Sequence record: OM634661.1
DNA length: 64,000 bases
Reading direction: 5' to 3' (one strand)
Positions 32,187 to 49,637 of this stretch are shown here, piece by piece (the stretch's first letter is position 1; each line of letters opens with the position of its first letter). The notes under the pieces are model-generated. The model saw nothing but the letters and a program-made list of their open reading frames with translations, made no database searches and was not told the origin of the DNA. A program made the position numbers and the translations under genes.

Positions 32187-32203
32187 CGCCTTTGCATTTA
32201 GAA

Positions 32204-32977: not shown

Positions 32978-32992
32978 TGTATTTCACCGCCT

Positions 32993-33814: not shown

Positions 33815-33828
33815 AAAATATCATTCCC

Positions 33829-34395: not shown

Positions 34396-34410
34396 TTTAA
34401 AGACTCCTTT

Positions 34411-34692
34411 TTAAAGTAAAATTTTAAACTTATCAACAAGAAAATCTTTAAAGTCTTCTTCTGAGTTGACATCATCAGGAACTTTATCTGGGACAGTGAC
34501 TCTCATTTGATAACTGTTAGACATAAGATAGTAAGAATCATAATCTAAAATTTCTTCTTTTTCAGTAAAAGATTCTTGATATCCTTCTCGAAGATTAAAA
34601 AACATATCTCCTTTGTAATTAATAACAACAACATATTCATCATTGAATTCTTTTAAAGTGATAGGATCTCTGCCTAATTTAAAATTGGTCAT
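34411..34692 (-). CDS. hypothetical protein
   Basis: 93-aa ORF, RBS GGAGG. Confidence 0.65.
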   Translation of the reverse strand: MTNFKLGRDPITLKEFNDEYVVVINYKGDMFFNLREGYQESFTEKEEILDYDSYYLMSNSYQMRVTVPDKVPDDVNSEEDFKDFLVDKFKILL

Positions 34693-34715
34693 TTAAAATA
34701 CCTCCATAATATATA

Positions 34716-35498: not shown

Positions 35499-36337
35499 AG
35501 TTTTAATATCTTGATAGATTTTTTGATTTCTTCTGAAACGTTATCTGTAGACCACTCACCTTTATATCCAAGAGGAGAACAAATACATTCAATGCCAGAA
35601 ATGTTTGAATGATACTTCTTATGTGTATGTCCAAACTGAGCAATTCTGACTTTATATTTTTCAGCTAACAATCCAATTTGCTGATTACCTATAAAGGCAT
35701 TGAAATAATCCCAAGAAGGATCATTTTTACGTTCAACAAATTCAATAAAAGGAACAATATGTGTAACTAAAACAATTTGATTGGTTAAATGTTGTGGGAC
35801 TTTTTTAATACTTTCTTCTAATTTAGAAGTAAAAAATGAAGCAACATGTTCATTTGAAGATTTGCCGAAATTCACATAATCTTTGTCTGACCAAACAGAT
35901 CCTGCATAAGTCATTTTCTCTAATTCTTTTTTAGAGAAAGAAGGGTGAGCGGTGCTATAGTTGTACCATCCCATTTCTCCTATGAAATAATATCCTTTAT
36001 AAGAAAAGAATGAATGTTTAATATCATATTGATCACAAAGTGCTTCAAATTCATTCAGAGCACCATAAGGTTCATTTCTATATTGCCTATCCCACATTTC
36101 ATGATTGCCTGGAACAGCAAAGACTTCAAGACAATTTCCTGTTTGGATTTCATATTGTTTTTTAATTGAGTTCAGTTTTTTAAAAGTTGTTTTTAAAGAG
36201 CTAGACATGTCTCCAGCATAAGAGAGAATATCAACTTTATTTTCAATTAAAAAAGACACCGTTTCATCAATAATGCGTTCTGCAATAGATTGACGAAAAG
36301 TGTCTATATGATAATCAGAAGTAAATGCTACCTTCAT
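35495..36337 (-). CDS. calcineurin-like metallophosphoesterase
   Basis: SDYHID, AGD, PGNHE, VTHIVP, FGHTH. Confidence 0.85.
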   Translation of the reverse strand: MKVAFTSDYHIDTFRQSIAERIIDETVSFLIENKVDILSYAGDMSSSLKTTFKKLNSIKKQYEIQTGNCLEVFAVPGNHEMWDRQYRNEPYGALNEFEALCDQYDIKHSFFSYKGYYFIGEMGWYNYSTAHPSFSKKELEKMTYAGSVWSDKDYVNFGKSSNEHVASFFTSKLEESIKKVPQHLTNQIVLVTHIVPFIEFVERKNDPSWDYFNAFIGNQQIGLLAEKYKVRIAQFGHTHKKYHSNISGIECICSPLGYKGEWSTDNVSEEIKKSIKILKL

Positions 36338-36342
36338 TCAAA

Positions 36343-36597
36343 TCACCTTTCTTTATCCTTATTCTTTAAAATGGTTTTTTCAATTCTAGAAACAGCAACA
36401 TCAATTGTGTGTTTTAAGAATTCACATGTTCTAAATTCAATTTTGTTATGAAAATCATTTAATCCTATAGTAGATATAGTATCATATAGAAAACCAAAAA
36501 AGAAGTTTGGACTTAAATCAAAATAATTCGATGGAATTTCAATGAATATTTTATCATAAGATGAAGCATGTCTTTTAAGAGATATAGACTTGCTCAC
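36343..36597 (-). CDS. hypothetical protein, STAS-like (DUF4325-like); N-terminus possibly frameshifted from ATG 36668
   Basis: IFIEIP..LSPNFFFGFL..IG motif; the only strong RBS (AAAGGAG) leads an out-of-frame ATG upstream. Confidence 0.4.
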   Translation of the reverse strand: MSKSISLKRHASSYDKIFIEIPSNYFDLSPNFFFGFLYDTISTIGLNDFHNKIEFRTCEFLKHTIDVAVSRIEKTILKNKDKER

Positions 36598-36741
36598 ATT
36601 TAGGCCATGATACTTTTCTTTAATAAAAAAGATGGAATATTGATATGAATATTAAAATGAGATGACATTTTAATGCTCCTTTGGAATGTATTCTTAGCAG
36701 ACTCCCCCCTGGGATATCCCACTTATTATAAAAAAAGAGAA

Positions 36742-37023
36742 TTAAATTAAATCTTCTCTTTGTAAAAATATTTGATTTAATTTTTGTTTTAGATGATTGA
36801 AAGTTTCAAATTTAATATAAAGATTATCTTCATCAAAATCAATATCTTGAATAACGATAATATACTTTCCAGAGTCACCTCGGTATATGAGCATATTTTG
36901 TCCAAATCCAATATGATCATTTAATCTGACAAATTGCTTTTTATCATCATAATCAAAGACAGAATCATTATAATAATTTTTCACTAATTGAACAATCTCA
37001 TCATGTTCTTGTTTTGTCAACAT
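36742..37023 (-). CDS. hypothetical protein
   Basis: 93-aa ORF, RBS AAGGAG. Confidence 0.65.
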   Translation of the reverse strand: MLTKQEHDEIVQLVKNYYNDSVFDYDDKKQFVRLNDHIGFGQNMLIYRGDSGKYIIVIQDIDFDEDNLYIKFETFNHLKQKLNQIFLQREDLI

Positions 37024-37044
37024 AAAATCAACTCCTTTATAAAT

Positions 37045-37082
37045 AAAAGATCGCCCTCGGCTTGGAAACTAAGGCGATCTTT
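37045..37082 (-). terminator. intrinsic terminator downstream of the minigene
   Basis: AAGATCGCCTT..GAGGGCGATCTTTT. Confidence 0.7.
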
Positions 37083-37148
37083 CTCGTTTAATTTGTTATA
37101 TCTAGGTGTTTTTAGGATAACTAATTCCTATATTCATGATGATATTAA

Positions 37149-37172
37149 TTATTTAACAACGATGCGTGGCAT
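37149..37172 (-). CDS. 7-codon minigene MPRIVVK, identical to the C-terminal cap of the poly-Ubl precursor
   Basis: AAGGAGGTG-ACTATTC-ATG CCA CGC ATC GTT GTT AAA TAA. Confidence 0.6.
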   Translation of the reverse strand: MPRIVVK

Positions 37173-37217
37173 GAATAGTCACCTCCTTAAAAGGATGTTA
37201 GATATATATATAGTATA

Positions 37218-37649
37218 TTAGATCTCTTGTACTACTTCTGTTTCTTCAGGTAGAACTGAAATCTTATATGCTCCTAATCGAATATCACTTTTATGTGGAT
37301 GAGAATCAACAATTGTTGTTTTTCTTGTTTTAGGCTGCTTTGTTTCAAAAGACATATCAAGTTCATGAAGTCTTCCAGTTGCAACGATAAATGATCCAAC
37401 TTGAATCGGGTTCTTTTGACTAACTTCATCAAATAAATCTTTTGGTAAAAATACAGTGAACTCTCCGAGTCCATCATCAACTGTTAAATAAACAGCTGCT
37501 GGGTCATCTTCTGTATTAGGCATAAAAGAAGATGTATCTAAAATAGATAAAACTTTTCCACCTAACTTCATGCTCTGCCCAGAATTATAATTTCCTTTAA
37601 TTGCAGCAGTGAAAGTAGTGACATGAGGCTTAATAATTTTAAAGATCAT
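37218..37649 (-). CDS. stand-alone OB-fold protein (DnaE C-terminal/anticodon-binding type)
   Basis: LGGKVLSI..AVYLTVDDGLGEFTVFLP..F..IQVGSFIVATGRL. Confidence 0.6.
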   Translation of the reverse strand: MIFKIIKPHVTTFTAAIKGNYNSGQSMKLGGKVLSILDTSSFMPNTEDDPAAVYLTVDDGLGEFTVFLPKDLFDEVSQKNPIQVGSFIVATGRLHELDMSFETKQPKTRKTTIVDSHPHKSDIRLGAYKISVLPEETEVVQEI

Positions 37650-37715
37650 ATTTTAAACAACTCCTTTATCCTTTAATTCACTCTAAGCATTTTGAATATT
37701 AAAAATCAAGTCTTT

Positions 37716-38306
37716 TTAAGAGATATATTCAGAATATTTTCTTGTGACCAAATGTTGAAGAATTTGTATGAGTTCATGTGCTTTATTTACTAAGTAAACA
37801 ATGTCCGTAGAACTCAGTTGATGAATGTTTACAATAAGTTCTGCAATAGATTTGTTAACATCATCAAAATGCAGATACCAAACAACCCTATAATCTTTTA
37901 ATTTAAGAAAATCATGCATATAACTAATATAATCATCAAGTTGATCATCAATATTCTCTAGAGCTTTTTGCATTTCACCAGATATAAAAAACATACCTAA
38001 AGCATATTGAAGACTATATGAGAATTCATCCTCAATCATGCTTTGTAATTCTTCAAACTCTTTAAATTGGTTTCCACATGAAGTCTTAATTTCTTTAGAA
38101 AGTTCTGAAAAGATTTGTATATAATATTGAAGAATAGAGTCTTTGATATCAGATCTTTTTTTATCAGAAAAGATATAGGCTGATATTAAAGACTCAAAAG
38201 GATTTTTCTGTTCGGATGTTAAAGTATCATGGGTAGCATGAGATTCAGGTTCAGAAAATAGCTTTTTAATATGAAAATAAGCTTCTCTTTCATTTTGAGA
38301 ACTCAA
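37716..38306 (-). CDS. hypothetical protein
   Basis: 196-aa ORF, RBS GAGGTG. Confidence 0.7.
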   Translation of the reverse strand: MSSQNEREAYFHIKKLFSEPESHATHDTLTSEQKNPFESLISAYIFSDKKRSDIKDSILQYYIQIFSELSKEIKTSCGNQFKEFEELQSMIEDEFSYSLQYALGMFFISGEMQKALENIDDQLDDYISYMHDFLKLKDYRVVWYLHFDDVNKSIAELIVNIHQLSSTDIVYLVNKAHELIQILQHLVTRKYSEYIS

Positions 38307-38316
38307 TCATATCACC

Positions 38317-39321
38317 TCATTTTCCTTGTTGATCGGCTATGTGAAGAAGACATAATTTATTTATATCGTCTTTATCTAAGCCGTTTCTTTCTAATTTTTT
38401 ATATATTTTTTGGAAAGCTGATTCAGGATTTTCACTTTTCCCTACTTGGTGAAGCATCATGTGATACTGAATTAATAATAGTGTTTTTTGAATAAACATT
38501 TGATCAAAACCAATATTCGTTAGAAATTGAAAAGCAATTTTAGTTGATACATTTTCATGACCAATAAAATTTGCATATCTTTTCTTTTCACCTTTAAAAT
38601 TATAAAAAGATTTTGTTTCATACTTACCGATATCATGGAATAAAGCAGCAATCAAAATAGATAAGTCATCTGTTTGAGATTTTACATAATCCCACACATA
38701 AAATGTATGTCTACTAACAGAGAATGAATGGTAAGTACTATCTTGCGCCAAATTAAATATATTGTCAAATGAGGAACAATAAGACGATAATTCTTTGAAT
38801 AGATCATCATGTTCAGCATCACTTTTTACAAGTTCAATGAACTTTTCTTTTTTATCAGAGATATCATTTGTTTCACCATAAACATAGATACGATTCCAAC
38901 CTTCAGTTTTTAAAGGTATTTGAGTCGCATTGTACATTTCAATTAAACGTTTCTTAGGAACATGTTTTTCTGGAGACCTTTGAAGATTCTGTTTTAAACA
39001 TGTTTCTAATGAATGTTGGAAAAAATATATTTCTTTTTCTACATCTAATTTCTTAATAAGTGTTAGAAAATGAACACGTTTTTTTCTTGATAAATTTGTT
39101 GCATCTATAATAACATCTTCATCATTCATCAAAAGTTCTTTTGCTTTTTGATAAATATACTCAAAGACTTTTTGATCATGATCAAAGTTGTCATATGAAC
39201 CAGCCATTATTTTTCTGGTTTCATCTGATGAAAGAACAGTTCCTTCAAGAGTTTTAGACAATGTTGATTTTCCTGAACCAGGAGGTCCGCAAAGCATACG
39301 GAATGTAGCCATATTATTCAC
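38317..39321 (-). CDS. polynucleotide kinase (AAA_33) fused to an HD domain
   Basis: GPPGSGKST, IIDATNL..R, then SVSRH..AALFHDIGK..GHE..HM. Confidence 0.85.
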   Translation of the reverse strand: MNNMATFRMLCGPPGSGKSTLSKTLEGTVLSSDETRKIMAGSYDNFDHDQKVFEYIYQKAKELLMNDEDVIIDATNLSRKKRVHFLTLIKKLDVEKEIYFFQHSLETCLKQNLQRSPEKHVPKKRLIEMYNATQIPLKTEGWNRIYVYGETNDISDKKEKFIELVKSDAEHDDLFKELSSYCSSFDNIFNLAQDSTYHSFSVSRHTFYVWDYVKSQTDDLSILIAALFHDIGKYETKSFYNFKGEKKRYANFIGHENVSTKIAFQFLTNIGFDQMFIQKTLLLIQYHMMLHQVGKSENPESAFQKIYKKLERNGLDKDDINKLCLLHIADQQGK

Positions 39322-39788
39322 CTCTCTACGAATGTAAACCTCTGAACTTTTTTTCCATCTACTTCTAATTTTCCAAAAAACATTTCTTTAGGCCTTGCCC
39401 AATGATTTGCTTTTTCATCTTTGTAAAGAATAAGGGTTTCTTCTGTTTCGGTATGAACAGCTTCACCAGTAATAGTATATATGCTTCCTTTGTAATGCTT
39501 AAACTGTGATCCAATAAGAAGATGTGTATTTACGAGATCCATTGTGTCTTTAGTAATATGATAATCAAAATAATCAACTTCATGAAGATCATATTCTAAG
39601 GAGAATTTTAATAGATCAGTTACAACAACATCTCTTATGTCATACTCTATCGTATTGCATTTAGGACATCTGAAATGAGGAATATTATTAATCTTAACAG
39701 TTTCTTGATTTTTAATATGATGATGTACTGTTCCTAATTTCAAAGGCATTTTTTCATCACAATGATAACAAATAACAGCATGACTCAT
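39318..39788 (-). CDS. YgiT-type zinc finger fused to DUF1653
   Basis: CYHC..NIPHFRCPKC; FKHYKG.IY..A.HTET..LY..WARP.EMF. Confidence 0.75.
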   Translation of the reverse strand: MSHAVICYHCDEKMPLKLGTVHHHIKNQETVKINNIPHFRCPKCNTIEYDIRDVVVTDLLKFSLEYDLHEVDYFDYHITKDTMDLVNTHLLIGSQFKHYKGSIYTITGEAVHTETEETLILYKDEKANHWARPKEMFFGKLEVDGKKVQRFTFVER

Positions 39789-40117
39789 AACTCTCTCATC
39801 CTCCTTAAAGCTTCTTGCCTAGAAATAGGTCTAGGGCCTTGTGTAGTTCGTTTGATACCAGGAATGGGGCCTAAGTAGCCCGCAATCTCTAATTGCTTCT
39901 GTGCTCGTCTAAATACATAATCAATATTTTCATGAGGTTTAATAGTGCCATCAATTTCTAGATGTTTGTTTGGAATCCAAACATTTTGATTTGTGTCATT
40001 GAGGGTATATCTCTTGGCATGTCCTTTTGCATTAGAAGGTTTATGATAAGATCTATTGATTAATTTAATTTTAATACCTTTATAGTATTGATCAGAAAAA
40101 TTATATTCTACAGTCAT
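39785..40117 (-). CDS. hypothetical phage protein
   Basis: 110-aa ORF, RBS GGAG. Confidence 0.65.
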   Translation of the reverse strand: MTVEYNFSDQYYKGIKIKLINRSYHKPSNAKGHAKRYTLNDTNQNVWIPNKHLEIDGTIKPHENIDYVFRRAQKQLEIAGYLGPIPGIKRTTQGPRPISRQEALRRMREL

Positions 40118-40131
40118 GATAAGTTCTCCAT

Positions 40132-40560
40132 TTAGTCTAAAATCATATCAGGATCATCGTGAATGTTGCCGATGATTCGTAATGATTGATCTTGAAATTC
40201 ATTCAATGTATCTCCGACACCATGTGATACACCTGATACATTTGATGTTGATTTCATCATTCTAACTCCTAAGAATGTATCTTGATCATATTCAACAAGT
40301 AAAATATAAGCATCTTCCTCTGAAATAGGATAGTATTGTCCTTGTAAAATATCACCTTCATAAATTCCTACATGATAGATATCATTATGAGTGGTGTATT
40401 GTCCAACAGTTTGAGGGATTACTTCTTCTTTATGAATAGAACCTTCTTCATTTAAAGAAATAATGAAGTGTTTTTCAATATTTTTTGTTGGTTGCAAATA
40501 AGCTCCATAAATCCATTCACCAGTATCAACAGATTTTCCACGGAACTTTATTTTCCTCAT
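40132..40560 (-). CDS. YopX family protein
   Basis: IKFRGK..WIYG, TVGQYT..IYEGDIL, IIGNIHD. Confidence 0.85.
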   Translation of the reverse strand: MRKIKFRGKSVDTGEWIYGAYLQPTKNIEKHFIISLNEEGSIHKEEVIPQTVGQYTTHNDIYHVGIYEGDILQGQYYPISEEDAYILLVEYDQDTFLGVRMMKSTSNVSGVSHGVGDTLNEFQDQSLRIIGNIHDDPDMILD

Positions 40561-40651
40561 TACATTCAGCTCCTTATCATTAAATAAAAAAAGGTCAGCA
40601 AGCAATTGATAAACAACCGCTCACCGACCTTATAAAGAGAGATAATAAATG

Positions 40652-41884
40652 TCAATTTAAAGATTTTTGTGATTCATGAGCGTCCAAGAAAAACTTAATC
40701 TCATTTATCTTCTTTAGACCTTCTCCTCTTTTGTTCAAAATTCTAAGATCTTGCTTCAAGTAAGCCTTTGTTAAAAAAGGTTGGATATGACGAGGAACAT
40801 TTTGTTTGTTCCAAAGCATAAAGTCTTTTTTATCAAGCTTAGCGCCTTTTGGAAGCCAATAAGAAATGCTTGATTTAACAATATCGATATAATCAAATAC
40901 GAAAGATGCAACATTTTCAACTGAAGGTCTATATGCTGGTGGAACTTTAGAAATAAAGTCATCATAGGTGTTGTTGTAAATGGATCTAATAATCATATTA
41001 GGTGACAAAGAATCTTCCACAGCTGAGTGCAGCATAACATAACTATCTGTTTTTATTTTAACAAATTGACCGTCAATATTTAAAACCCATCCTTCAATTT
41101 CTAATCCATTTGATGTAGACATAAGAGTAATCAATTCTTCTAAAGAAGATGAAATTAACTCTACACATTTCACACCATATGGTTTTGCAATAAGTGAAAA
41201 TTGTTGGTGCGTCAAATGATTACCATTATGAATATTTCTTGCTCCAATTAAATGCAGTCCAAAATCTTTTTCCTCATACTCAACAACATGTTTGTCATCT
41301 GGAGAAATGTTTTCAAAAATGAAAGTAAGATCAGGATTCTCCTTTAACATTTGTTTATGACCATCTGTTAAGTAATTGTATCCATTTTGAAGTCTATATG
41401 ATTGAACTGGATCTAAGGCTCTACTTCCAGACATGATATACTGACCTTTGTAATACCTTGCAGATTGCATTGATCCATCTAACTTATTGGTAACTTCAAA
41501 GAGTTTTGCATGTTTAATCTTTTCTTTAATAATATTTTCTGATGTTTCTTCTCTTTCATTAATATTGAAGAATTTAGAGAAAGGAGTTAGAACAAGCTCT
41601 TCATTTAGAAGATCAATAACAACACTTCTGCTTTCTAATAAAAATCCGTTGTTTTCTGTCCAAGCACCTCTTTGGAACCCAGCGACTCCATATCTTACAA
41701 GAAGAAGATGATCTTTCTGTGTAAATTCAAGGTCTTGAAAGACGGTATTCATTTGTTCATCATCTAGTTCTTGTAATGATTCTTTAAAATTATTAATAGA
41801 TTTATTGAAAGTAGATGTATAAAGATCTTTAACTTCCATCACTTTATTATATACAGGGTTCCAAGAAAAAATATCTCTATTCAT
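40652..41884 (-). CDS. T4 Rnl1-like RNA ligase
   Basis: PFSKFFN, motif I TNKLDGS, TFIFE, EGWV, VKIKTDSY. Confidence 0.85.
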   Translation of the reverse strand: MNRDIFSWNPVYNKVMEVKDLYTSTFNKSINNFKESLQELDDEQMNTVFQDLEFTQKDHLLLVRYGVAGFQRGAWTENNGFLLESRSVVIDLLNEELVLTPFSKFFNINEREETSENIIKEKIKHAKLFEVTNKLDGSMQSARYYKGQYIMSGSRALDPVQSYRLQNGYNYLTDGHKQMLKENPDLTFIFENISPDDKHVVEYEEKDFGLHLIGARNIHNGNHLTHQQFSLIAKPYGVKCVELISSSLEELITLMSTSNGLEIEGWVLNIDGQFVKIKTDSYVMLHSAVEDSLSPNMIIRSIYNNTYDDFISKVPPAYRPSVENVASFVFDYIDIVKSSISYWLPKGAKLDKKDFMLWNKQNVPRHIQPFLTKAYLKQDLRILNKRGEGLKKINEIKFFLDAHESQKSLN

Positions 41885-42203: not shown

Positions 42204-42995
42204 TTAAGACAGAAAATTGTATTCTGCTTTAAATTTAATTTCATTAAGTGTAATAATATCCAATAATTCTCTTCTATGATCATAGTATGGAGAAGAATTG
42301 TTCTTTATATAAGCTATAAATTCACGAGAATTGTAATTTGTATTATTTAATGTGTATGTTATTTGATTTCGTTTGATATATGAATAAAGATATTCATCTA
42401 AAAATTTTAAATAAATAATAGAACATTGATTCTCATGGAGGATTTGAGCATTATTTAAATAAATTCCTTTAAAAGTTTGGTTGCTTGAAATTTTAGATTC
42501 TCTTATATAAGAACGATTTTTTAGAGTAGCATTACCAAAAATTTTTGAACCAACTTCGATATGTGAATGAAAAATCTTAGCATTTCCAAACACTTCTGCA
42601 TCTGAACGAATGTTGGAATAATCTGTAACAATTGCATTATCATAAACTTTTGCCTGCCCAGAAACATAAGATAACTTATTTATTTGAGCAGATCCAAATA
42701 TGTTCGCATCATCACTGATAATAGATTTACCAAAAACTTTTGCATCATCAAAAACTTTGGCATCATGAAATACAGAAGCATTTTCATAGACTCTTGCATT
42801 ATGATACACCATAGCATCATGAAAAATCCAGCAATCTCCTTCTTGAGATAGATTATTCTCAGATTCAACGAATCCACCGAGATCTCCTTTTAGAACATTC
42901 ATAGTGTCTATGTCTTTCAAAGCTTCGATTCGATGTAGTTTTCGTCCGTTGTAAAACGTGTGCTGATCTTTCAACTTATACTTCAACTGCTTCAA
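42204..42995 (-). CDS. hexapeptide-repeat phage protein, paralogue 3
   Basis: RIEALKD..KGDLGGFVESENNLSQEGDCWIF plus repeats. Confidence 0.8.
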   Translation of the reverse strand: MKQLKYKLKDQHTFYNGRKLHRIEALKDIDTMNVLKGDLGGFVESENNLSQEGDCWIFHDAMVYHNARVYENASVFHDAKVFDDAKVFGKSIISDDANIFGSAQINKLSYVSGQAKVYDNAIVTDYSNIRSDAEVFGNAKIFHSHIEVGSKIFGNATLKNRSYIRESKISSNQTFKGIYLNNAQILHENQCSIIYLKFLDEYLYSYIKRNQITYTLNNTNYNSREFIAYIKNNSSPYYDHRRELLDIITLNEIKFKAEYNFLS

Positions 42996-43595: not shown

Positions 43596-43636
43596 AAAGA
43601 AAATAGAAGATGATGAATAAATTTCACCACCTTCTA
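43596..43636 (-). terminator. terminator after the E1/ThiF gene
   Basis: AGAAGGTGGTGAA-ATTTA-TTCATCATCTTCT followed by a T-rich run. Confidence 0.65.
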
Positions 43637-43646
43637 CTAAGGTATT

Positions 43647-44543
43647 CTATGCTTCTGTTGTTGTCAATTCTTCTTCATTTTCAGAAACTGGATTCAAAAC
43701 TTCTTCAGATAAAGTTTCAAACTTATTAAACTTTGTAGAGAAATTATGAAGTTTTGAGTTAAATGTAACACAATGAGATGAAATGCCCTCATCTTTTAAA
43801 GTAAGAATTGAATTTAAATAGCCAAACATTAATGTTCCAGCTGTAATATTCGTATGAATGTTTTGTGGATTAGACACTGCACGTTCTGCACAGGACTCTT
43901 CTGTTGGCAATTTGTCAGTTCCATCTAAAACTTCTGGGAACATTTCTGCAATACAAGGTGTTCTGAATGAAATAGGAGCACCTGACTTTGTATCTTTTGT
44001 TAGATAGTTTTTAGAATTATGACCAAGTACAACTTGCCCAGCATATTCTTCATTACCAGCATCAACCCAAAAACTATTTTCAATACGTTGATAAACATCA
44101 TGAATGATCTTTCTTGTTTTATTATTATCAACTGCACCAACGAAAACAGGAATTGAATTAGGAACTGATTTTGCAATGTCATAAAGCATTTTTTCTTCAG
44201 TTAAATAAGAGTCAACGATATTAATATCAATACCAAACGCTCTTGCATAGCGCATACCAAGAACTTGCGCCTTGTTTTTACCAACATCACTTGCAAGAAA
44301 GTTTTGTCTAGAGATGTTTTTGGTTTCAACTTCATCTCCATCAATAACAGTTACATAATGAGCAGGATTTGATTCAAATAATTTTGAACCAGCTTTTTGA
44401 TTTTGTAATGAAATTTGACGGAATAAGTTCGGGATAATATAACCGCCATTACCTCCAGAACCAATAATAATAAAATGTTTTGACATTTTTGGAAAGGTTG
44501 ATAATTGATAAGTTGGTGTGAATGAAAGTTCCAAATTAAACAC
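43647..44543 (-). CDS. ThiF/E1-like Ubl-activating enzyme (PRTRC ThiF type)
   Basis: IIIGSGGNGG, IDGDEVETKNISRQNF..GKNKA, AVDN..R, WVDAGN, putative catalytic Cys in ESCAE; start may be TTG 44534. Confidence 0.9.
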   Translation of the reverse strand: MFNLELSFTPTYQLSTFPKMSKHFIIIGSGGNGGYIIPNLFRQISLQNQKAGSKLFESNPAHYVTVIDGDEVETKNISRQNFLASDVGKNKAQVLGMRYARAFGIDINIVDSYLTEEKMLYDIAKSVPNSIPVFVGAVDNNKTRKIIHDVYQRIENSFWVDAGNEEYAGQVVLGHNSKNYLTKDTKSGAPISFRTPCIAEMFPEVLDGTDKLPTEESCAERAVSNPQNIHTNITAGTLMFGYLNSILTLKDEGISSHCVTFNSKLHNFSTKFNKFETLSEEVLNPVSENEEELTTTEA

Positions 44544-44555
44544 TCCTTTAATAAT

Positions 44556-44578
44556 AAAGGGCAGGTAAATACCCGCCC
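44556..44578 (-). terminator. hairpin between the JAB and E1 genes
   Basis: GGGCGGGTA-TT-TACCTGCCC followed by TTTATT. Confidence 0.5.
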
Positions 44579-44826
44579 ATTTTGATTTTATTTACTCTTA
44601 ACAGCTGGATTGAAAAGTTGATACTGTCCATTTTTAATCATAGTTGCAACAATATTACGAATATGTTCAATATCATTATCAACACTTTCAGAATTCACTG
44701 TATATAAATCAATTTCAGAAACGAAAATTGTATCGTCACTTTCATGATCAATAAGACTTACATAATTTTCAAAGTTACTGGCATATTCATCTTCATAATA
44801 TCCAGTGCTATACTCTTCTTCTTCGT

Positions 44827-45897
44827 TTACCAGACCTGTTTTTTTTTTGAATCTTGATAAGGATATTGAGAATCATGGTAAGAATATCCTTGCATGTAAT
44901 CATAGCCTTCTTCAAAATCATACGTGTTTGCATATCCAGTCAATGCTTCACCAGCTGAATAAGAATTAGCTCCACCATAGTTGTAAGTTGTTCTTTTACC
45001 TTTCCATGCAGGAGTAACACTAACTGAATGACAATTATACCAAGCAGCTGGATACTCAACATCAGGCCAAGGACCATTGTAAGGATGGTGTTCTACTTCT
45101 CTTTCTTCAGTGATAACTGGATCTTGGCCTTCAAGATTCAATACAGATGTCATAACCGTTTCTGTTTCATACATTGGTTGATCAAAAAGATGATGATAAG
45201 GAATGTTGATCTTTTTATCACCAGAAACAAAACGGAATAAGAAATCAGGTTGATCTTTTAAAATATTACCATAAACGCCATAAAACTGTGTCATATTTTC
45301 ATTTGAATCATCTGTACTAGACCAGAAAGCATTCATTGTGTGATGAGAATGCGTTTCACATAATGGCGTACAATTTTGTCTAAGCCAATGAACCATACCG
45401 TCATCTTTAAAGTCTGATAGTCCACCAGAGTTTTTCTGAATCGGACAGTAAATAACAAGCTGACCATCTTCTACAAGACCTTCAATTGGCTTCGCAGGAA
45501 TTTTTCCTTGAGCTTGGAAAAACTGAGGAAGCTGAACATTATCATGATTCCAAAAGAATAATACAGAAGCCTCTGTTTTGTCTCTATTGTAAACATCTTT
45601 ATAAAAAGATAGCACTTGAAGCCAATATTTAAAAGGAATTTTAGGTACTAATAGTTGGACTCCCTCCTCTAAAGGAGATAGACCTGGAATAGAAACGTTT
45701 TTGCCGAATTCTTGAATTTGTGTAATGAAAATAGAAATTGGTGTTTTTTCAATACGGAAGACACCATTTGATGCTGTTACGAAATTAAGCTTTTTGGAAA
45801 GGTCTAGATTTTCAAGACCTTCTCCTTTGTATTGTAAATAACCTGTTAATTGAGCTGCTAATTGTTGTTCTAAACTTAAAGCTAGTGGATTTGTCAT
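44827..45897 (-). CDS. prokaryotic JAB/JAMM metallopeptidase (PRTRC protein A type); probably extends to 44588 via the A10 run
   Basis: TEASVLFFW (catalytic Glu), CPIQ..S, JAMM motif HSHHTMNAFWSSTDD. Confidence 0.88.
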   Translation of the reverse strand: MTNPLALSLEQQLAAQLTGYLQYKGEGLENLDLSKKLNFVTASNGVFRIEKTPISIFITQIQEFGKNVSIPGLSPLEEGVQLLVPKIPFKYWLQVLSFYKDVYNRDKTEASVLFFWNHDNVQLPQFFQAQGKIPAKPIEGLVEDGQLVIYCPIQKNSGGLSDFKDDGMVHWLRQNCTPLCETHSHHTMNAFWSSTDDSNENMTQFYGVYGNILKDQPDFLFRFVSGDKKINIPYHHLFDQPMYETETVMTSVLNLEGQDPVITEEREVEHHPYNGPWPDVEYPAAWYNCHSVSVTPAWKGKRTTYNYGGANSYSAGEALTGYANTYDFEEGYDYMQGYSYHDSQYPYQDSKKKQVW

Positions 45898-45927
45898 TTT
45901 ATATTCCTCCTATTATGTGCTATATAA

Positions 45928-46695
45928 TTACATTCTATTTGACATAAAGTGATCAATTGCTTCTTGAACATTCATATTTTCTGAAATCAAAATATCATTT
46001 GGAAATGAATATTGAGTTCCTTCTTCTTTTGCTTCTTTTAGTTTATCATCAATATATTGAAATAGATGATTTGTTCTAAATACACTAACATTTACATTGT
46101 CTTTTTCATAATTAAAGTCAACAAACTTTTGACTATCTAGATCATGATTAAAGGGATTAGACAAAAATTGATCTGGAACAGTCATAATACCTCTAGAAAA
46201 GTTCACATTTGGATAACTAGATTGTGAACCCCAACAAAGCCAAGGGTCACTATTTGTATTCGAAAATGGATATCTGTAAACTGTCTCATTACCAGAAAGA
46301 ATCTGGCCTTTTAGAGCATATACGCCGCCTTGATGATAAGTTCTTGCTTCTGATCCTTCTTGTTTTCTAAAACTTAAAAGCCAAAGAGCATCAGGTACAA
46401 CAATTTCATATTCAGCAAAGTTTTCATGACTATCATGAACATCATAAGAAACTTTTTTAATATGTTGCGGCACTGTAATTGCATAAAATTCTAATGAATT
46501 CTTTGACGCATATTTAATACAACCCCATTGACTTGGAAGTAAAGGTGTTTGACTAACAGCATTATCCGAAATGACTCGTTGAATATTTTCAACTGTTGTC
46601 TTTTTAATAGATTTCATACCAGAAGGTGTCACCTTTTCAATTGTAACACCTTCCTTTTCAATATGAATGCTTAGTTTAGGATTAGTAACAGACAT
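45928..46695 (-). CDS. prokaryotic E2 family D conjugating enzyme (PRTRC protein B type)
   Basis: TPLLP, VP.ALW, VYALK..TVYRYPFSNT..LCWG (catalytic Cys), FLSNPFNHDL; ATG 46695 after GGAGG. Confidence 0.82.
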   Translation of the reverse strand: MSVTNPKLSIHIEKEGVTIEKVTPSGMKSIKKTTVENIQRVISDNAVSQTPLLPSQWGCIKYASKNSLEFYAITVPQHIKKVSYDVHDSHENFAEYEIVVPDALWLLSFRKQEGSEARTYHQGGVYALKGQILSGNETVYRYPFSNTNSDPWLCWGSQSSYPNVNFSRGIMTVPDQFLSNPFNHDLDSQKFVDFNYEKDNVNVSVFRTNHLFQYIDDKLKEAKEEGTQYSFPNDILISENMNVQEAIDHFMSNRM

Positions 46696-46708
46696 CGTAT
46701 GTCCTCCT

Positions 46709-48388
46709 TTAAATAATTGAGTATATTCTATTTTGTTCATGGAAATGAGTTACGGTATAAAATCTAACTGGAACTTCATGAACACCTGTTTGCATACCAA
46801 GAATAACTTTTAAATACTTGATAGGATCTCCACATTCAGATGAAATCTTCATGAAATATTGACGATTTTTGTCTAACGGATCTTTTACAAAAGCATGTAA
46901 GTTATTGTTAACGAAATAAATCCCATCCTTGATATGTGAATAATCAGCATTTGTGTTACTGAAAAATTCAAGCGTATCATCTAAACCAGAAAGATATTCT
47001 AAACGAGATTTAAAAAATCTATATGACTCTTTCTCATATTCATCTGTTTCTTCACTTTCAACAGAAGGAGTTTCAACATGTTCCTCTTTCTTTTGTTCGT
47101 CAATTTGTTTTTTGATTAAATCATACAAAGAATTCTCGAAATTTAATACAGGTTTTGAAGTATCATCACTTGTTGATTCAGTTTCAGTTGAATCATCTTG
47201 ATCTTCATTTGAAGAACGAAGAGCTTCCTGATATACTTCATTAAATTGATCTAATGACTCTTGATAATTATCAGGTAAAAGAGATTTAAATGGTGCTGTT
47301 TCAATTTTAATTGCCCATATTGAACCAATGATAACTTTTGCATACTCAATACCATTTTCAACAATAAATTCTTCAACAGAAGTAATTGAAGCAATTACAG
47401 GAACACCTTGTGATTTTTCATATTCAAAACCTTCTGGTAGCTCATCATTATAACCAACAGGAAGCATCATGAATTTTCTAGAACCATCAGGATCATTCTT
47501 AGATAAAATATTAATGTTTAAGCCTGGGACAATAAGATTAGATGAATCTACTTCTTTGTAAATTGGACCATGAAAATTCTCTGTAATATAAGAACGAACA
47601 GAAAGAGCTTCATTTGAAAGGTCCTTCTTAATATAAGATGAGATAATTTTATTATTTTCATCAATTGCTTGTTGATTCATTTGCTGAATCTTTTTATTAA
47701 TATGATCTTCATATTGTCCAACAATATTAGTATAAACTTCTTCATACTGAGACAAAATAAAAGCTTTATCTAGTGTTAAAGTAAGATTTCTAACAATATT
47801 AGTTGTAAGCCTTCTATCGTATGAATTTATTAAATGACTTTTAAATGGGATATGAATATAAAACAACAAAGAATCTTGATGTTCCTTGGTTTTCAAAGAA
47901 AAAAATTGAGCTGATGCAGCATCTTCTATCATTCTTTTAAGTGAACAATAAGTTGAATACATGTTTGCATGATGTTCTTCTAAGTATCTAATGAGTTCCT
48001 TATTATTTTGATCAGATTCTTCATGTCTAATTAATTCTATAGCTTTTAAAGCTGAAATTATTTTCTCATCTACAATACGCAAAGAAAGAGAATTTTTATT
48101 TTCATTAATTCTAGAGCCAGGGAATATCATTTTTAATAGATGTTTAAATGAATTTTTAATCTGATTATCATGATCTTCATTTGAATTTGGAAATTGTTCA
48201 AAAAAAGAAGGTAAATCTTCTAAAAAAGAATCTGTATTAAGTTCATATTCATCTAAAAGGCTGATAGAATACATGTCAGAAGATTGAGTATGTGAAAGAG
48301 CGGTTGTTAAGTCTTTCATTTCACGCAAAAAATTTAAGTAAGCTGCAATATGATTGGATTTTTTACGAAAAAGTTCTAAGTCATTCAT
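46709..48388 (-). CDS. large hypothetical protein in the Ubl operon
   Basis: 559-aa ORF, RBS AAAGGAGG; its stop is 13 nt before the E2 start. Confidence 0.8.
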   Translation of the reverse strand: MNDLELFRKKSNHIAAYLNFLREMKDLTTALSHTQSSDMYSISLLDEYELNTDSFLEDLPSFFEQFPNSNEDHDNQIKNSFKHLLKMIFPGSRINENKNSLSLRIVDEKIISALKAIELIRHEESDQNNKELIRYLEEHHANMYSTYCSLKRMIEDAASAQFFSLKTKEHQDSLLFYIHIPFKSHLINSYDRRLTTNIVRNLTLTLDKAFILSQYEEVYTNIVGQYEDHINKKIQQMNQQAIDENNKIISSYIKKDLSNEALSVRSYITENFHGPIYKEVDSSNLIVPGLNINILSKNDPDGSRKFMMLPVGYNDELPEGFEYEKSQGVPVIASITSVEEFIVENGIEYAKVIIGSIWAIKIETAPFKSLLPDNYQESLDQFNEVYQEALRSSNEDQDDSTETESTSDDTSKPVLNFENSLYDLIKKQIDEQKKEEHVETPSVESEETDEYEKESYRFFKSRLEYLSGLDDTLEFFSNTNADYSHIKDGIYFVNNNLHAFVKDPLDKNRQYFMKISSECGDPIKYLKVILGMQTGVHEVPVRFYTVTHFHEQNRIYSII

Positions 48389-48403
48389 TTTATGATCCTC
48401 CTT

Positions 48404-48823
48404 TTAAATGAAATCGTCCTCTTGATCAATAGAGGGCAATGCAACAGGTTTAGTGGAATTAATTTTTGAAACAAAAAGAGTATTTTTTCTAACTTTCTGT
48501 GTGTAAATAGAAAGAATATCAGTAGAATAATGTACAAAATAACGTTTAATATTTCCTGAATCATTTTTTACTTGAGCTAATAATGTATTTGAAGAATATT
48601 CTGGTATAAAAAGATTTACGTTTAAGTCAGATACTTTCTCAATTGAATTAACATGATCAATGATAGATTGAAAACGAGCGCTGTAAGATTCTTGAGTTTC
48701 TTCTAATAACCAAAAATCTGACATGACTGCTGCATTAGATGCTGTGTATCCTACATCTATAAGCTTGTTATTCAATTCTTCTTTATTTAAATTTTCAAAA
48801 TCTGTTTGAAGTTGTTGAGTCAA
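48404..48823 (-). CDS. hypothetical protein in the Ubl operon (139 aa)
   Basis: TTG 48823 after AAGGAGGAG. Confidence 0.7.
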   Translation of the reverse strand: MTQQLQTDFENLNKEELNNKLIDVGYTASNAAVMSDFWLLEETQESYSARFQSIIDHVNSIEKVSDLNVNLFIPEYSSNTLLAQVKNDSGNIKRYFVHYSTDILSIYTQKVRKNTLFVSKINSTKPVALPSIDQEDDFI

Positions 48824-48853
48824 ATTAAACTCCTCCTTATTAGTCAATTCATG

Positions 48854-48898
48854 AAAGGCAAGAAGATGTGTATAAATACAAGCCTCTTCCTGCCCTTT
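48854..48898 (-). other. long stem-loop directly 3' of the poly-Ubl gene
   Basis: AAAGGGCAGGAAGA..TGTAT-TT-ATACA..TCTTCTTGCCTTT. Confidence 0.55.
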
Positions 48899-48929
48899 TG
48901 TATCAACTAATCAATTTTTTTGAAATGAA

Positions 48930-49637
48930 TTACTTTACAACGATGCGTGGCATACCTTTAACTCCAGCTTTCACTTCGAAAGTAATTGTATCACCTTCTA
49001 CAGTTGCTGTTGCATTTTCTAATTCTGGATAGAATTTGCTAAACTCTTCTTGAATTTCTTTAACAGTTAGCTCATCATTATCAATTTTTAATTCGTTAGT
49101 ACCGTATTTCACAGTACGAGCCATACCTTTAACTCCAGCTTTTACCTCGAAAGTAATTGTGTCGCCATCGACTGTTGCTGTTGCATTCTCAAGTTCAGGG
49201 TAAAATTTACTGAACTCTTCTTGAATCTCTTTAACTGTCAATTCATCGTTGTCAATTTTTAATTCATTAGTACCATATTTTACTGTACGTGCCATGCCCT
49301 TCACTCCCGCTTTCACTTCAAATGTAATTGTATCTCCATCAACAGTAGCTGTCGCATTTTCTAGTTCAGGGTAGAATTTGCTGAATTCCTCCTGAATTTC
49401 CTTAACAGTTAATTCATCATTATCAATTTTAAGTTCATTAGTGCCATACTTTACTGTGCGTGCCATACCTTTAACCCCCGCCTTTACCTCAAATGTAATT
49501 GTATTTCCTTCTACAGTTGCTGTTGCATTTTCAAGTTCTGGATAGAATTTAGTGAACTCTTGTTGGATTTCCTCAACTGTCAACTCGTCATTATCAATTT
49601 TCAATTCGTTAGTACCGTATTTTACTGTTCTTGTCAT
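48930..49637 (-). CDS. poly-ubiquitin-like precursor: 4 x 57-aa Prok_Ub (PRTRC protein C type) plus MPRIVVK cap
   Basis: ATG 49637 after GGAGG; every unit ends FYPELENATA..ITFEVKAGVKG, matching the PRTRC-C C-terminal GxKG pattern. Confidence 0.88.
   Translation of the reverse strand: MTRTVKYGTNELKIDNDELTVEEIQQEFTKFYPELENATATVEGNTITFEVKAGVKGMARTVKYGTNELKIDNDELTVKEIQEEFSKFYPELENATATVDGDTITFEVKAGVKGMARTVKYGTNELKIDNDELTVKEIQEEFSKFYPELENATATVDGDTITFEVKAGVKGMARTVKYGTNELKIDNDELTVKEIQEEFSKFYPELENATATVEGDTITFEVKAGVKGMPRIVVK
48954..49637 (-). repeat. four tandem 171-bp coding repeats
   Basis: Units at 49637-49467, 49466-49296, 49295-49125 and 49124-48954; many third-position differences. Confidence 0.95.

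What the first reader, a model, noticed from the sequence alone, without database searches (positions are those of the whole stretch)
43647..49637. Complete E1-E2-JAB-Ubl conjugation cassette (PRTRC type) carried among counter-defence genes
Seen, in transcription order: poly-Ubl, hairpin, 139-aa ORF, 559-aa ORF, E2-D (LCWG), JAB (E..HSH-x7-S-x2-D), hairpin, ThiF/E1 (GxGGxG, RQ, ESCAE), terminator. All catalytic residues look intact. Known: bacterial Ubl conjugation systems such as Bil and CBASS Cap2/Cap3 are host anti-phage systems, and PRTRC cassettes are described mainly from plasmids and ICEs with ParB partners and without an established target. No ParB gene was seen in this window. Inference: a virus-encoded protein-tagging pathway. 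It could modify host defence proteins, exclude competing phages, decoy host Ubl systems, or tag its own proteins.
Basis: partly seen in the sequence, partly recalled or inferred. Interest (0 to 1): 0.9.

Follow-up and report, generated by a model that had tools for sequence, protein, structure and literature searches.

The report
Phage-borne ubiquitin-like tagging gene cassette
A 216-kb Bacillus phage carries an intact six-gene kit for cutting a ubiquitin-like protein out of a four-copy precursor and attaching it to other proteins, which matters because such kits have been characterised only as bacterial anti-phage defences and this one's target is unknown.

Summary
The window is Bacillus phage vB_BauM_KLEB27-3, a jumbo myovirus. 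On the minus strand, 43647-49637 holds six genes in this order:
- a poly-Ubl of four 57-aa units, each ending AGVKG, followed by a 7-aa cap
- a 139-aa protein
- a 559-aa protein
- an E2 (Prok-E2_D type)
- a JAMM/JAB peptidase
- a ThiF-type E1

The catalytic residues are invariant in seven aligned orthologues. The same block is syntenic in eleven cassettes, all from jumbo phages or 220-240 kb phage-plasmids, including pBtic235. There, the two cassette genes read from published RNA-seq (E1 and JAB) rise about 16-fold on induction.

The closest known kind is PRTRC, Iyer's operon type 6d. Only the Ubl reaches the curated cut-off, the D/E/F proteins are not matched, and no ParB is annotated in the genome.

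Three features are new relative to what was retrieved here:
- a capped polyubiquitin-like precursor of 2-6 units, with identical proteins and saturated synonymous sites
- two very fast-evolving accessory proteins
- a conserved change of reading frame in the JAB gene

The most likely function is a phage-run Ubl conjugation cascade active in lytic growth. Its target is unknown. One relative's record labels the poly-Ubl a virion protein.

Verdict: a new variant of a known but uncharacterised kind.

The parts
48930..49637 (-). Poly-Ubl precursor gene (gp199, 235 aa). It has four head-to-tail 57-aa beta-grasp units, each ending KAGVKG, followed by a 7-residue C-terminal cap.
   Evidence: Prok_Ub E=3.9e-27 with 4 stretches. 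PRTRC_C 61.4 bits, above its cut-off. Unit layout. Tandem repeat of period 171 nt, 4.0 copies, 81% nucleotide matches. Units are 90-100% identical in protein, with pS 0.6-0.86.
48854..48897 (-). 13-bp stem-loop just after the poly-Ubl stop codon. Probably a terminator or attenuator that separates poly-Ubl from the enzyme genes.
   Evidence: MFE -29 kcal/mol, z=-3.86, 0 of 200 shuffles fold as well. The same stem is found in L007. WH1 has a 12-bp stem plus a U-tract and pBtic235 has hairpins at the same position.
48404..48823 (-). Small accessory protein (gp198, 139 aa). It evolves fast, and its extreme C-terminus D-[FY]-I is invariant.
   Evidence: No family hit in Pfam, NCBIfam, PHROGs or PADLOC. 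Positional orthologues exist in 11 cassettes, all ending in DFI or DYI.
46709..48388 (-). Large accessory protein (gp197, 559 aa). It evolves very fast and sits where PRTRC_F (the 'alpha-helical protein') sits in canonical cassettes.
   Evidence: Only one relative found by the word-index search (61% identity). None outside its own cluster in 1.84 billion representatives. Identity to positional orthologues is 14-20%. No similarity to PRTRC_F of phage Dina. AlphaFold2 model unusable, pLDDT 39.
45928..46695 (-). E2-like conjugating enzyme (gp196, 255 aa) with candidate catalytic Cys154 in the motif LCWG.
   Evidence: Prok-E2_D matches 6 of 7 orthologues, best E=5e-12. C154, H121 and H210 are invariant. 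The alignment to PRTRC_B of phage Dina spans the Cys.
44588..45897 (-). JAB/JAMM metallopeptidase gene (gp195). It comprises a JAB-N-like N-terminal region, the JAMM core, a Tyr/Gly-rich tail and a further conserved 78-codon stretch in another reading frame.
   Evidence: Prok-JAB E=1.4e-4. PRTRC_A matches 7 of 7 orthologues, best E=1.4e-9. E109, H183, H185, S193 and D196 are invariant, as are R48 and W116. The downstream stretch is 90% identical in protein between two phages, with pS 0.33 and pN 0.057 in its own frame only, and has no early start codon.
44559..44578 (-). G+C-rich stem-loop with a T-rich tail, between the JAB gene and the E1 gene.
   Evidence: Terminator-like site with 8 pairs, 6 of them G-C. 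Fold -15.4 kcal/mol, z=-2.2.
43647..44534 (-). ThiF-type E1 adenylating enzyme (gp194, 295 aa) with candidate catalytic Cys215.
   Evidence: ThiF E=2.2e-12. PRTRC_ThiF E=7.9e-31, 107 bits against a cut-off of 144.75. GxGGxG, R76-Q77, D136 and S214-C215 are invariant, also against canonical PRTRC ThiF of phage Dina. PDB relatives by profile are ThiF-type proteins, Uba1 and the NEDD8 E1.
43602..43638 (-). Terminator-like 16-bp stem-loop that closes the cassette.
   Evidence: z=-4.0, 0 of 200 shuffles fold as well.

Best explanation
The cassette is a self-contained, phage-encoded ubiquitin-like conjugation pathway that runs during lytic development.

Shown by sequence:
- The modifier is made as a capped head-to-tail precursor of four identical 57-aa beta-grasp units.
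- A JAMM peptidase, an adenylating E1 with a conserved Ser-Cys, and an E2 with a conserved Cys are all intact and co-inherited with the precursor.

Inferred steps:
1. The JAB peptidase cuts after the Gly that ends each unit and removes the cap, giving four monomers with a free ...KG terminus per translated precursor.
2. The E1 adenylates that Gly and probably takes it on Cys215.
3. The Ubl passes to E2 Cys154.
4. The E2 transfers it to lysines of target proteins.
5. The two fast-evolving proteins (139 aa, with an invariant D-[FY]-I C-terminus, and 559 aa) act as specificity factors or are themselves partners or targets.
6. The JAB may also reverse the tagging.

A stem-loop after the poly-Ubl gene would keep the modifier in excess over the enzymes. 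The target is unknown. Candidates are the phage's own virion or assembly proteins, or host proteins.
For: - Family hits and motifs for all four core proteins.
- Catalytic residues are invariant in 7 orthologues that share only 33-47% identity, and are also kept against a canonical PRTRC E1.
- The six-gene order is identical in 11 cassettes, while the flanking genes differ between KLEB27-3 and WH1.
This only makes sense if the precursor is cleaved.
- Units are 93-100% identical in protein although their synonymous sites are saturated, so each unit is under strong selection.
- A canonical PRTRC_C also has the G-x-K-G motif followed by an extension.
- The pBtic235 E1 and JAB genes rise by log2 of about 4 after mitomycin C, together with the prophage's lytic genes.
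- The hairpin after the poly-Ubl gene is conserved in position in relatives.
- This variant was found only on jumbo phages and phage-plasmids. Two pattern scans of 185,579 species genomes found none.
Against: - No conjugate, thioester or cleavage has been observed for this or any PRTRC/6d system that the literature searches retrieved.
- E2 and JAB hits in this phage itself are below the Pfam gathering scores.
- No structure could be obtained for the E2.
- No solved relative of the E2 or JAB exists by sequence.
- No E3-like domain was recognised.
- The JAB gene needs a change of frame to include its last conserved stretch.
- The role of the two accessory proteins is pure inference.
- Nearly all pBtic235 genes are induced by mitomycin C, so the expression result is not specific to the cassette.
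Confidence: 0.6

Rival explanations
1. Replicon-maintenance module. As the PRTRC name (ParB-related, ThiF-related cassette) implies, the system would serve plasmid or prophage replication, partition or copy control. It would do so by tagging a replication or partition protein. Lytic relatives such as KLEB27-3 would have inherited it from phage-plasmid ancestors.
For: - In pBtic235, pAD3 and the Cytobacillus element the cassette lies within a few kb of 'replication initiator protein A' or ParM/StbA genes, and upstream of DNA polymerase III alpha.
- Relatives of the E1 are common on plasmids: 430 records, 139 of them from Bacillus.
Against: - KLEB27-3 has no annotated ParB, RepA, ParM or integrase among its 299 features, yet keeps all catalytic residues under purifying selection.
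- WH1 and Edson have different neighbours.
- In pBtic235 the genes go up with lytic induction rather than being specific to lysogeny.
Confidence: 0.15
2. Counter-defence by interference. The phage Ubl or JAB would act on a host ubiquitin-like defence of the Bil or CBASS type, as a decoy substrate or as a deconjugase that strips host tags from phage proteins. Tagging by the phage's own E1 and E2 would be secondary.
For: - Host Ubl systems tag phage tail proteins or prime cGAS-like enzymes (PMC11601596).
- The cassette sits among NAD-salvage and RNA-repair genes of the kind phages use against defences.
- The fast evolution of the two accessory proteins fits an arms race.
Against: - A decoy or deconjugase would not need a conserved E1 and E2 with intact cysteines, nor a 4-6-fold precursor.
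- No cassette protein matches a defence-system model except weak E1 hits to the E1-E2 fusion models.
- Whether the hosts carry Bil-like systems was not examined.
Confidence: 0.1
3. Sulfur-carrier or other adenylation chemistry. The Ubl would be thiocarboxylated by the E1, as ThiS and MoaD are, and would feed a cofactor or nucleoside modification.
For: The E1 also hits the ThiF and MoeB equivalogs weakly, with E values from 1e-9 to 1e-3. PDB ThiF appears among its relatives.
Against: - An E2 with a conserved Cys, a JAMM peptidase and a multi-copy capped precursor are not part of the sulfur-carrier pathways described in PMC1779556.
- No sulfurtransferase, rhodanese or cofactor-synthesis gene is annotated in the cassette.
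- Scores against the ThiF and MoeB equivalogs are far below their cut-offs.
Confidence: 0.05
4. An uncleaved poly-Ubl acts as a structural or scaffold protein: a string of beta-grasp domains built into the virion. The enzymes would act on something else.
For: The WH1 record names its 5-unit poly-Ubl a 'virion structural protein'. No labelled homologue explains that name.
Against: - The basis of the label is unknown, as no paper was found.
- The KLEB27-3 record, which labels many structural proteins, calls gp199 hypothetical.
- An invariant G-x-K-G at every unit end and a cap in all 11 cassettes point to cleavage.
- Detecting Ubl peptides in virions is equally expected if monomers are conjugated to virion proteins.
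Confidence: 0.05

Closest known systems
PRTRC cassette (NCBIfam TIGR03735-03738 and related models), equal to operon type '6d' of Iyer, Burroughs and Aravind 2006 (PMC1779556)
   Same: - The parts list matches: a small Ubl with a conserved C-terminal Gly, a JAB with an extra N-terminal domain, a ThiF-type E1, and an E2 that lacks the classical His but has a conserved His after the Cys.
- Both include a fast-diverging extra protein.
- The gene order C-F-B-A-ThiF is the same as in Ralstonia phage Dina.
- PRTRC models are the best hits for all four core proteins.
- The S-C motif of the E1 and the G-x-K-G end of the Ubl are shared.
- Type 6d was already listed for B. cereus and B. thuringiensis.
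   Different: - Scores for A, B and ThiF are far below the curated cut-offs.
- There is no match to PRTRC D, E or F, or to Pfam alpha-hel2 and DUF2016.
- No ParB is annotated.
- The modifier is a 2-6-unit capped precursor rather than one unit with an extension.
- It is carried by jumbo myoviruses and phage-plasmids.
Bil (BilABCD) bacterial ISG15-like conjugation system
   Same: Separate Ubl, E2, JAB and E1 genes. The JAB can expose the Ubl C-terminus, and protein conjugation takes place in a phage-host conflict (PMC11601596).
   Different: Bil is host-encoded defence that tags a phage tail protein, whereas here the phage is the carrier. No sequence-level hit to defence models was found. The Ubl architecture is different.
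Type II CBASS Cap2/Cap3 (operon types 6a/6b)
   Same: E1 adenylation chemistry together with a JAB peptidase. There are weak PADLOC 'E1-E2' hits to the E1 domain (E=9e-6).
   Different: Cap2 is an E2-E1 fusion that conjugates the cGAS-like enzyme itself, with no free Ubl. Here the E1 and E2 are separate genes and there is a dedicated Ubl.
Bub (operon type 6e / DUF6527)
   Same: It is the prokaryotic operon type for which tandem 'polyUbl' proteins of 2-3 domains were first noted, and a JAB cleaves a precursor.
   Different: Bub E1 and E2 lack catalytic cysteines and work through oxyesters, and the operon includes the BubE serine protease. Here both cysteines are invariant, and no DUF6527 hit was found.
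Eukaryotic polyubiquitin genes
   Same: Head-to-tail identical units, cleavage needed after a terminal Gly, and extra residues capping the last unit. Protein identity is maintained despite synonymous divergence between units. The eukaryotic side rests on established knowledge; the phage side.
   Different: The unit is 57 aa and of the Prok_Ub/PRTRC_C family, ending KG rather than GG. The processing enzyme is presumably the operon's own JAMM peptidase.
Lambda/T1-type tail assembly protein I (Ubl domain) with the JAB-domain tail protein K
   Same: A phage-encoded Ubl-fold domain paired with a JAB peptidase (PMC1779556).
   Different: There is no E1 or E2 and no free modifier. It is part of tail assembly, not a conjugation cascade.

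Membership tests
PRTRC (NCBIfam) | PRTRC-type ThiF E1 (TIGR03736) at or above the curated cut-off | tested here: not met
   It is the best hit, E=7.9e-31, but scores 107.2 bits against a cut-off of 144.75.
PRTRC (NCBIfam) | PRTRC protein A (JAB, TIGR03735) at or above the cut-off | tested here: not met
   30.1 bits against 101.8. Only the JAMM core aligns. All 7 orthologues hit the model, best E=1.4e-9.
PRTRC (NCBIfam) | PRTRC protein B (E2, TIGR03737) at or above the cut-off | tested here: not met
   18.3 bits against 131.45. Pfam Prok-E2_D matches 6 of 7 orthologues, best E=5e-12.
PRTRC (NCBIfam) | PRTRC protein C (Ubl, TIGR03738) at or above the cut-off | tested here: met
   61.4 bits against 45.95. 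The score is summed over four repeats.
PRTRC (NCBIfam) | PRTRC proteins D, E and F present | tested here: not met
   The 139-aa and 559-aa proteins give no NCBIfam hit. Profile comparisons with proteins F and E of phage Dina give probabilities of 0.1 or less.
PRTRC (NCBIfam) | Linked ParB homologue | tested here: not met
   No ParB is annotated among the 299 features of the phage record, or within 9 kb of the cassette in relatives. This check is at annotation level; no HMM scan of every ORF was run.
Operon type 6d (Iyer et al. 2006) | Small beta-grasp Ubl with a conserved C-terminal glycine | tested here: met
   Every unit ends AG[VT]KG in 11 cassettes. Prok_Ub E=3.9e-27.
Operon type 6d (Iyer et al. 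2006) | E2-like protein with a conserved Cys, no classical His, and a conserved His C-terminal to the Cys | tested here: met
   C154 and H210 are invariant in 7 orthologues.
Operon type 6d (Iyer et al. 2006) | JAB with an N-terminal alpha+beta domain (JAB-N) carrying a conserved Arg and Trp | tested here: inconclusive
   A region of about 150 aa lies N-terminal of the JAMM core, with invariant R48 and W116. It has no Pfam DUF2016 hit, unlike protein A of phage Dina.
Operon type 6d (Iyer et al. 2006) | Fast-diverging alpha-helical protein with conserved charged residues | tested here: inconclusive
   The 559-aa protein is in the right position and is very fast-evolving. It has no alpha-hel2 hit. 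The model is poor, with mixed helix and strand.
Bub / 6e | E1 and E2 without catalytic cysteines; DUF6527 serine protease | tested here: not met
   The cysteines are invariant. No DUF6527 hit was found.
Type II CBASS Cap2/Cap3 | E2-E1 fusion protein next to a cGAS-like nucleotidyltransferase and an effector | tested here: not met
   The E1 and E2 are separate genes. The only hits to the fusion models are weak and confined to the E1 domain. The neighbouring nucleotidyltransferase is of the PolyA_pol/CCA type.
Bil (BilABCD) | Sequence membership of Bil Ubl, E2, JAB and E1 families | tested here: inconclusive
   No PADLOC, Pfam or PDB sequence hit to a named Bil protein was found. The PADLOC copy dates from 2023 and may lack Bil models.
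Bil (BilABCD) | Host-encoded anti-phage defence | tested here: not met
   The carrier is a phage or phage-plasmid in all 11 cases.

The most novel reading that the evidence does not exclude
A virus of bacteria runs its own complete ubiquitin-like conjugation pathway for its own benefit. Four to six identical modifiers are released from a polyubiquitin-like precursor and attached, during lytic growth, to the phage's own virion or assembly proteins or to host proteins. Two hyper-variable proteins choose the targets, and a conserved change of reading frame gives two forms of the JAB peptidase.
Probability: 0.3. Interest if true: 0.85.

Novelty: new variant of a known kind. Interest (0 to 1): 0.62.

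Why it matters
According to the papers read here, the prokaryotic Ubl systems characterised so far (CBASS Cap2/Cap3, Bil) are host-encoded immunity, and Bub is also bacterially encoded although its biological role is still open. The PRTRC/6d type has been known from sequence since 2006, but the literature searches run here retrieved no function for it.

This work shows that a well-conserved, catalytically intact version lives on jumbo Bacillus phages and their plasmid-prophage relatives. Two of its genes are switched on with the lytic programme in pBtic235. Its modifier is built like eukaryotic polyubiquitin.

That makes the open question of what 6d/PRTRC systems do approachable in culturable phage-host pairs. 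It also raises the possibility that phages use ubiquitin-like tagging themselves, rather than only suffering it.

The repeat structure is an unusually clean case of selection on each copy of a tandem protein repeat. The proteins are identical while the synonymous sites are maximally different.

Tried and rejected
Steps that led nowhere:
- The word-index protein searches were too insensitive for this family. The 559-aa protein and the E2 each returned only themselves and one close relative. A seven-sequence profile of the 559-aa family returned the same two.
- An exhaustive HMMER search with the 559-aa profile found nothing outside its own cluster.
- The AlphaFold2 model of the 559-aa protein from a two-sequence alignment was unusable (mean pLDDT 39), so no fold search was run.
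- PDB sequence searches gave no relative for the E2 or JAB, alone or as profiles.
- PHROGs and PADLOC gave no meaningful hits. The many low-E 'hits' of the poly-Ubl with 0 stretches are artefacts of summing over repeats.
- The 78-residue stretch after the called JAB ORF showed no significant similarity to the C-termini of the uninterrupted orthologues, by BLASTP or profile comparison. Its assignment to the JAB gene therefore rests on position and selection only.
- Two pattern scans of species-representative genomes found no relative. These scans rely on short exact patterns and can miss relatives.
- No paper on KLEB27-3 or WH1 is in the library.
- Rfam and tRNA scans of the window were empty.
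- Sigma-70-type promoter matches were not above the shuffled expectation.

Considered and set aside:
- The ThiF-bearing ~200-kb B. paralicheniformis plasmid has a different gene set.
- Plasmids of toxin-bearing clostridia and of a B. cereus strain that may carry an anthrax-type plasmid appeared in the hit list. They were deliberately not fetched.

Full report
**What the window is.** The 6-kb region is 100% identical to Bacillus phage vB_BauM_KLEB27-3 (OM634661.1, 216,671 bp, host Bacillus australimaris). Window coordinate plus 124,000 gives the record coordinate. The record carries terminase, portal, prohead protease, major capsid, tail sheath, tail tube, baseplate and tail fibre genes, plus holin and endolysin. 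No ParB, RepA, ParM or integrase is annotated among its 299 features. This is an annotation-level check.

**The observation.** All genes lie on the minus strand. In transcription order they are as follows.
- gp199 poly-Ubl, 48930-49637. It has four 57-aa units, each ending KAGVKG, then the cap MPRIVVK. Pfam Prok_Ub gives E=3.9e-27 with four stretches. NCBIfam PRTRC_C scores 61.4 bits, above its cut-off.
- A 13-bp stem-loop (z=-3.9).
- gp198, 139 aa.
- gp197, 559 aa.
- gp196, the E2, 255 aa, containing LCWG.
- gp195, the JAB, with the full JAMM signature.
- A G+C-rich stem-loop with a T-rich tail.
- gp194, the E1, 295 aa, containing GSGGNG, RQN, VDNNKTR and ESCAE.
- A 16-bp terminator-like stem.

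GGAGG ribosome-binding sites precede the GenBank starts of gp199 and gp198, and AGGAG precedes that of gp194. The E2 and JAB hits in this phage are below the Pfam gathering scores. However, 6 of 7 orthologues hit Prok-E2_D (best E=5e-12) and 7 of 7 hit PRTRC_A (best E=1.4e-9).

**Relatives.** The same six-gene block, in the same order, occurs in the following:
- a Logan metagenome contig, L007
- the B. cereus jumbo phages vB_BceM_WH1 and Edson
- the 220-240 kb circular elements pAD3 (B. velezensis), a Cytobacillus plasmid and the 235-kb element of B. thuringiensis israelensis
- IMG/VR contigs of 164-264 kb

The 235-kb element is pBtic235, described as an inducible circular jumbo prophage (PMC9700832). 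The flanking genes differ between KLEB27-3 and WH1, so the block behaves as a module. Two pattern scans of 185,579 species-representative genomes found no relative.

**Conservation.** Seven orthologues share 33-47% identity with the KLEB27-3 proteins. Across them, the following are invariant:
- E2: C154, H121 and H210
- JAB: E109, H183, H185, S193 and D196, plus R48 and W116 in the N-terminal region
- E1: the glycine loop, R76-Q77-N78, D136 and S214-C215

The Ser-Cys of the E1 is also kept in the canonical PRTRC ThiF of Ralstonia phage Dina and in two remote viral relatives.

**The precursor.** In all 11 cassettes the modifier gene holds 2, 4, 5 or 6 units. Within a genome the units are 93-100% identical in protein, except for a more divergent first unit in KLEB27-3 (about 90% identical to the others) and in WH1 and Edson (73-79%). 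Their synonymous sites are nevertheless saturated, with pS 0.6-0.94, and several values exceed the 0.75 expected at random. WH1 and Edson units pair by position, so the repeats predate that split. This is strong purifying selection on each unit. There may be added selection for DNA dissimilarity between repeats, but that part is inference. The layout parallels eukaryotic polyubiquitin genes. The canonical PRTRC_C of phage Dina has one unit ending G-R-K-G plus a 63-residue extension.

**The two accessory proteins.** The 559-aa protein sits where PRTRC_F sits in phage Dina, whose order is E-C-F-B-A-ThiF. It shows no similarity to PRTRC_F. It is 14-20% identical to its positional orthologues. It has no relative outside its own cluster in 1.84 billion representative proteins and could not be modelled. 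The small protein is just as variable, but ends in D-[FY]-I in all 11 cassettes. I read both as specificity factors or partners. That is inference.

**The JAB gene.**
- The stretch between the called JAB ORF and the E1 gene holds a 78-codon open stretch in another reading frame.
- That stretch has no start codon in its first 42 codons (KLEB27-3) or first 61 codons (L007).
- It is 90% identical in protein between KLEB27-3 and L007.
- It shows pS 0.33 and pN 0.057 in its own frame only, similar to the JAB ORF itself.
- Both genomes carry a long homopolymer run shortly before the end of the called ORF.
- In the nine other cassettes the JAB gene is one uninterrupted ORF of 365-460 aa.

The gene therefore contains one change of reading frame. 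It is conserved in two independently assembled genomes, so it is more likely programmed than damage. The pieces were searched apart and showed no significant similarity to the other orthologues' C-termini.

**Expression.** In Supplementary Data 1 of PMC9700832 (mitomycin-C-treated versus untreated GBJ002), the pBtic235 ThiF gene rises by log2 4.0 and the JAB gene by 4.0-4.2. Nearly all prophage genes rise with them. A strong stem-loop follows the poly-Ubl gene in KLEB27-3, L007, WH1 (with a U-tract) and pBtic235. This is consistent with more modifier message than enzyme message.

**Mechanism.** The best-supported reading is a phage-run conjugation cascade. The JAB releases monomers, the E1 adenylates the terminal Gly, and the Ubl moves through E1 Cys215 and E2 Cys154 to lysines of targets. 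The parts and their conservation are shown by sequence. Every chemical step and the target are inferred.

The WH1 record labels its poly-Ubl, and an unrelated neighbour, 'virion structural protein'. No labelled homologue explains this. The selective use of the label elsewhere in that record suggests a virion proteomics origin. No paper was found. If the label is real, Ubl peptides in virions would fit tagging of virion proteins.

**Comparison with known systems.**
- The closest kind is PRTRC, which corresponds to operon type 6d of Iyer et al. 2006. That type was already listed for B. cereus and B. thuringiensis.
- By curated thresholds only the Ubl qualifies, and D/E/F and ParB are missing. 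I therefore file it as a divergent sister variant that works like PRTRC/6d, not as a member.
- Bub (6e) is excluded because both cysteines are conserved here. CBASS Cap2 is excluded because the E1 and E2 are separate genes.
- PRTRC genes on a temperate phage are already annotated in RefSeq, so phage carriage as such is not new.
- No paper in the library describes a function for PRTRC/6d or a jumbo-phage Ubl system.

**Neighbourhood.** The cassette lies among the following genes:
- a NAMPT-type phosphoribosyltransferase
- a gene annotated as ribose-phosphate pyrophosphokinase (no Pfam hit at E up to 1e-4)
- RlaP
- a kinase-HD protein
- an Rnl1-type RNA ligase
- a 5'-nucleotidase
- a CCA/poly(A)-type nucleotidyltransferase
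- NADAR

Noticed in passing
window 44588-45897 (minus strand); L007 10769-12084: The JAB gene contains one change of reading frame. A 78-codon stretch after the called ORF is under purifying selection in its own frame in two phages and has no early start codon. It is preceded in both by a long homopolymer run. The nine other cassettes have one uninterrupted ORF. It is probably a programmed event that gives two JAB forms.
   Followed up: partly
window 48930-49637; L002 3829-4728; L003 3836-4735; L007 7029-7736: Synonymous sites between the poly-Ubl units are at or beyond saturation (pS up to 0.94, above the 0.75 random expectation), while the units are almost identical in protein. This suggests selection for DNA dissimilarity between repeats on top of selection on the protein.
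   Followed up: partly
L002 3829-4728 and 1092-2567 (phage WH1): The WH1 record calls its five-unit poly-Ubl (gp211) and an unrelated neighbour (gp208) 'virion structural protein'. No labelled homologue in the phage collection accounts for the names, and no paper was found.
   Followed up: partly
window 48404-48823 and positional orthologues in 10 other loci: The small accessory protein varies in length (91-183 aa) and in sequence, but always ends in Asp-Phe/Tyr-Ile. This looks like a docking peptide.
   Followed up: partly
window 22335-26705 (minus strand): DNA polymerase III alpha is annotated as two separate CDS, with an HNH endonuclease gene between them. In pBtic235 and the Cytobacillus element a LAGLIDADG endonuclease sits beside dnaE. 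This suggests homing-endonuclease or intron-type insertions in the polymerase gene of this phage group.
   Followed up: no
window 29521-41884 and 60300-60782: A cluster of NAD-salvage and RNA-repair families: NAMPT-type enzyme, an annotated ribose-phosphate pyrophosphokinase, RlaP, kinase-HD, Rnl1-type ligase, and NADAR further on. A Sir2-like gene lies at 13904-14638.
   Followed up: partly
window 31266-32977, 42204-42986, 59593-60288: Four paralogous genes are annotated 'glucosamine N-acyltransferase'. The one checked has YdcK beta-solenoid repeats. They are scattered through the early region, and one lies two genes downstream of the cassette.
   Followed up: no
L008, L009, L010 (pAD3, pBtic235, Cytobacillus plasmid), about 9870-10950 in each locus: In the three phage-plasmids the E1 gene is followed directly by a 'reverse transcriptase-like protein' and a small DNA-binding protein. 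A Spx/ArsC-family gene and RepA or ParM lie just upstream of the cassette. KLEB27-3 lacks these neighbours.
   Followed up: no
L012 5314-9666 (Ralstonia phage Dina): A 39-kb temperate phage carries a canonical PRTRC set (E, C, F, B, A, ThiF) at its genome end without a recognisable ParB. The protein after ThiF has no Pfam hit.
   Followed up: partly
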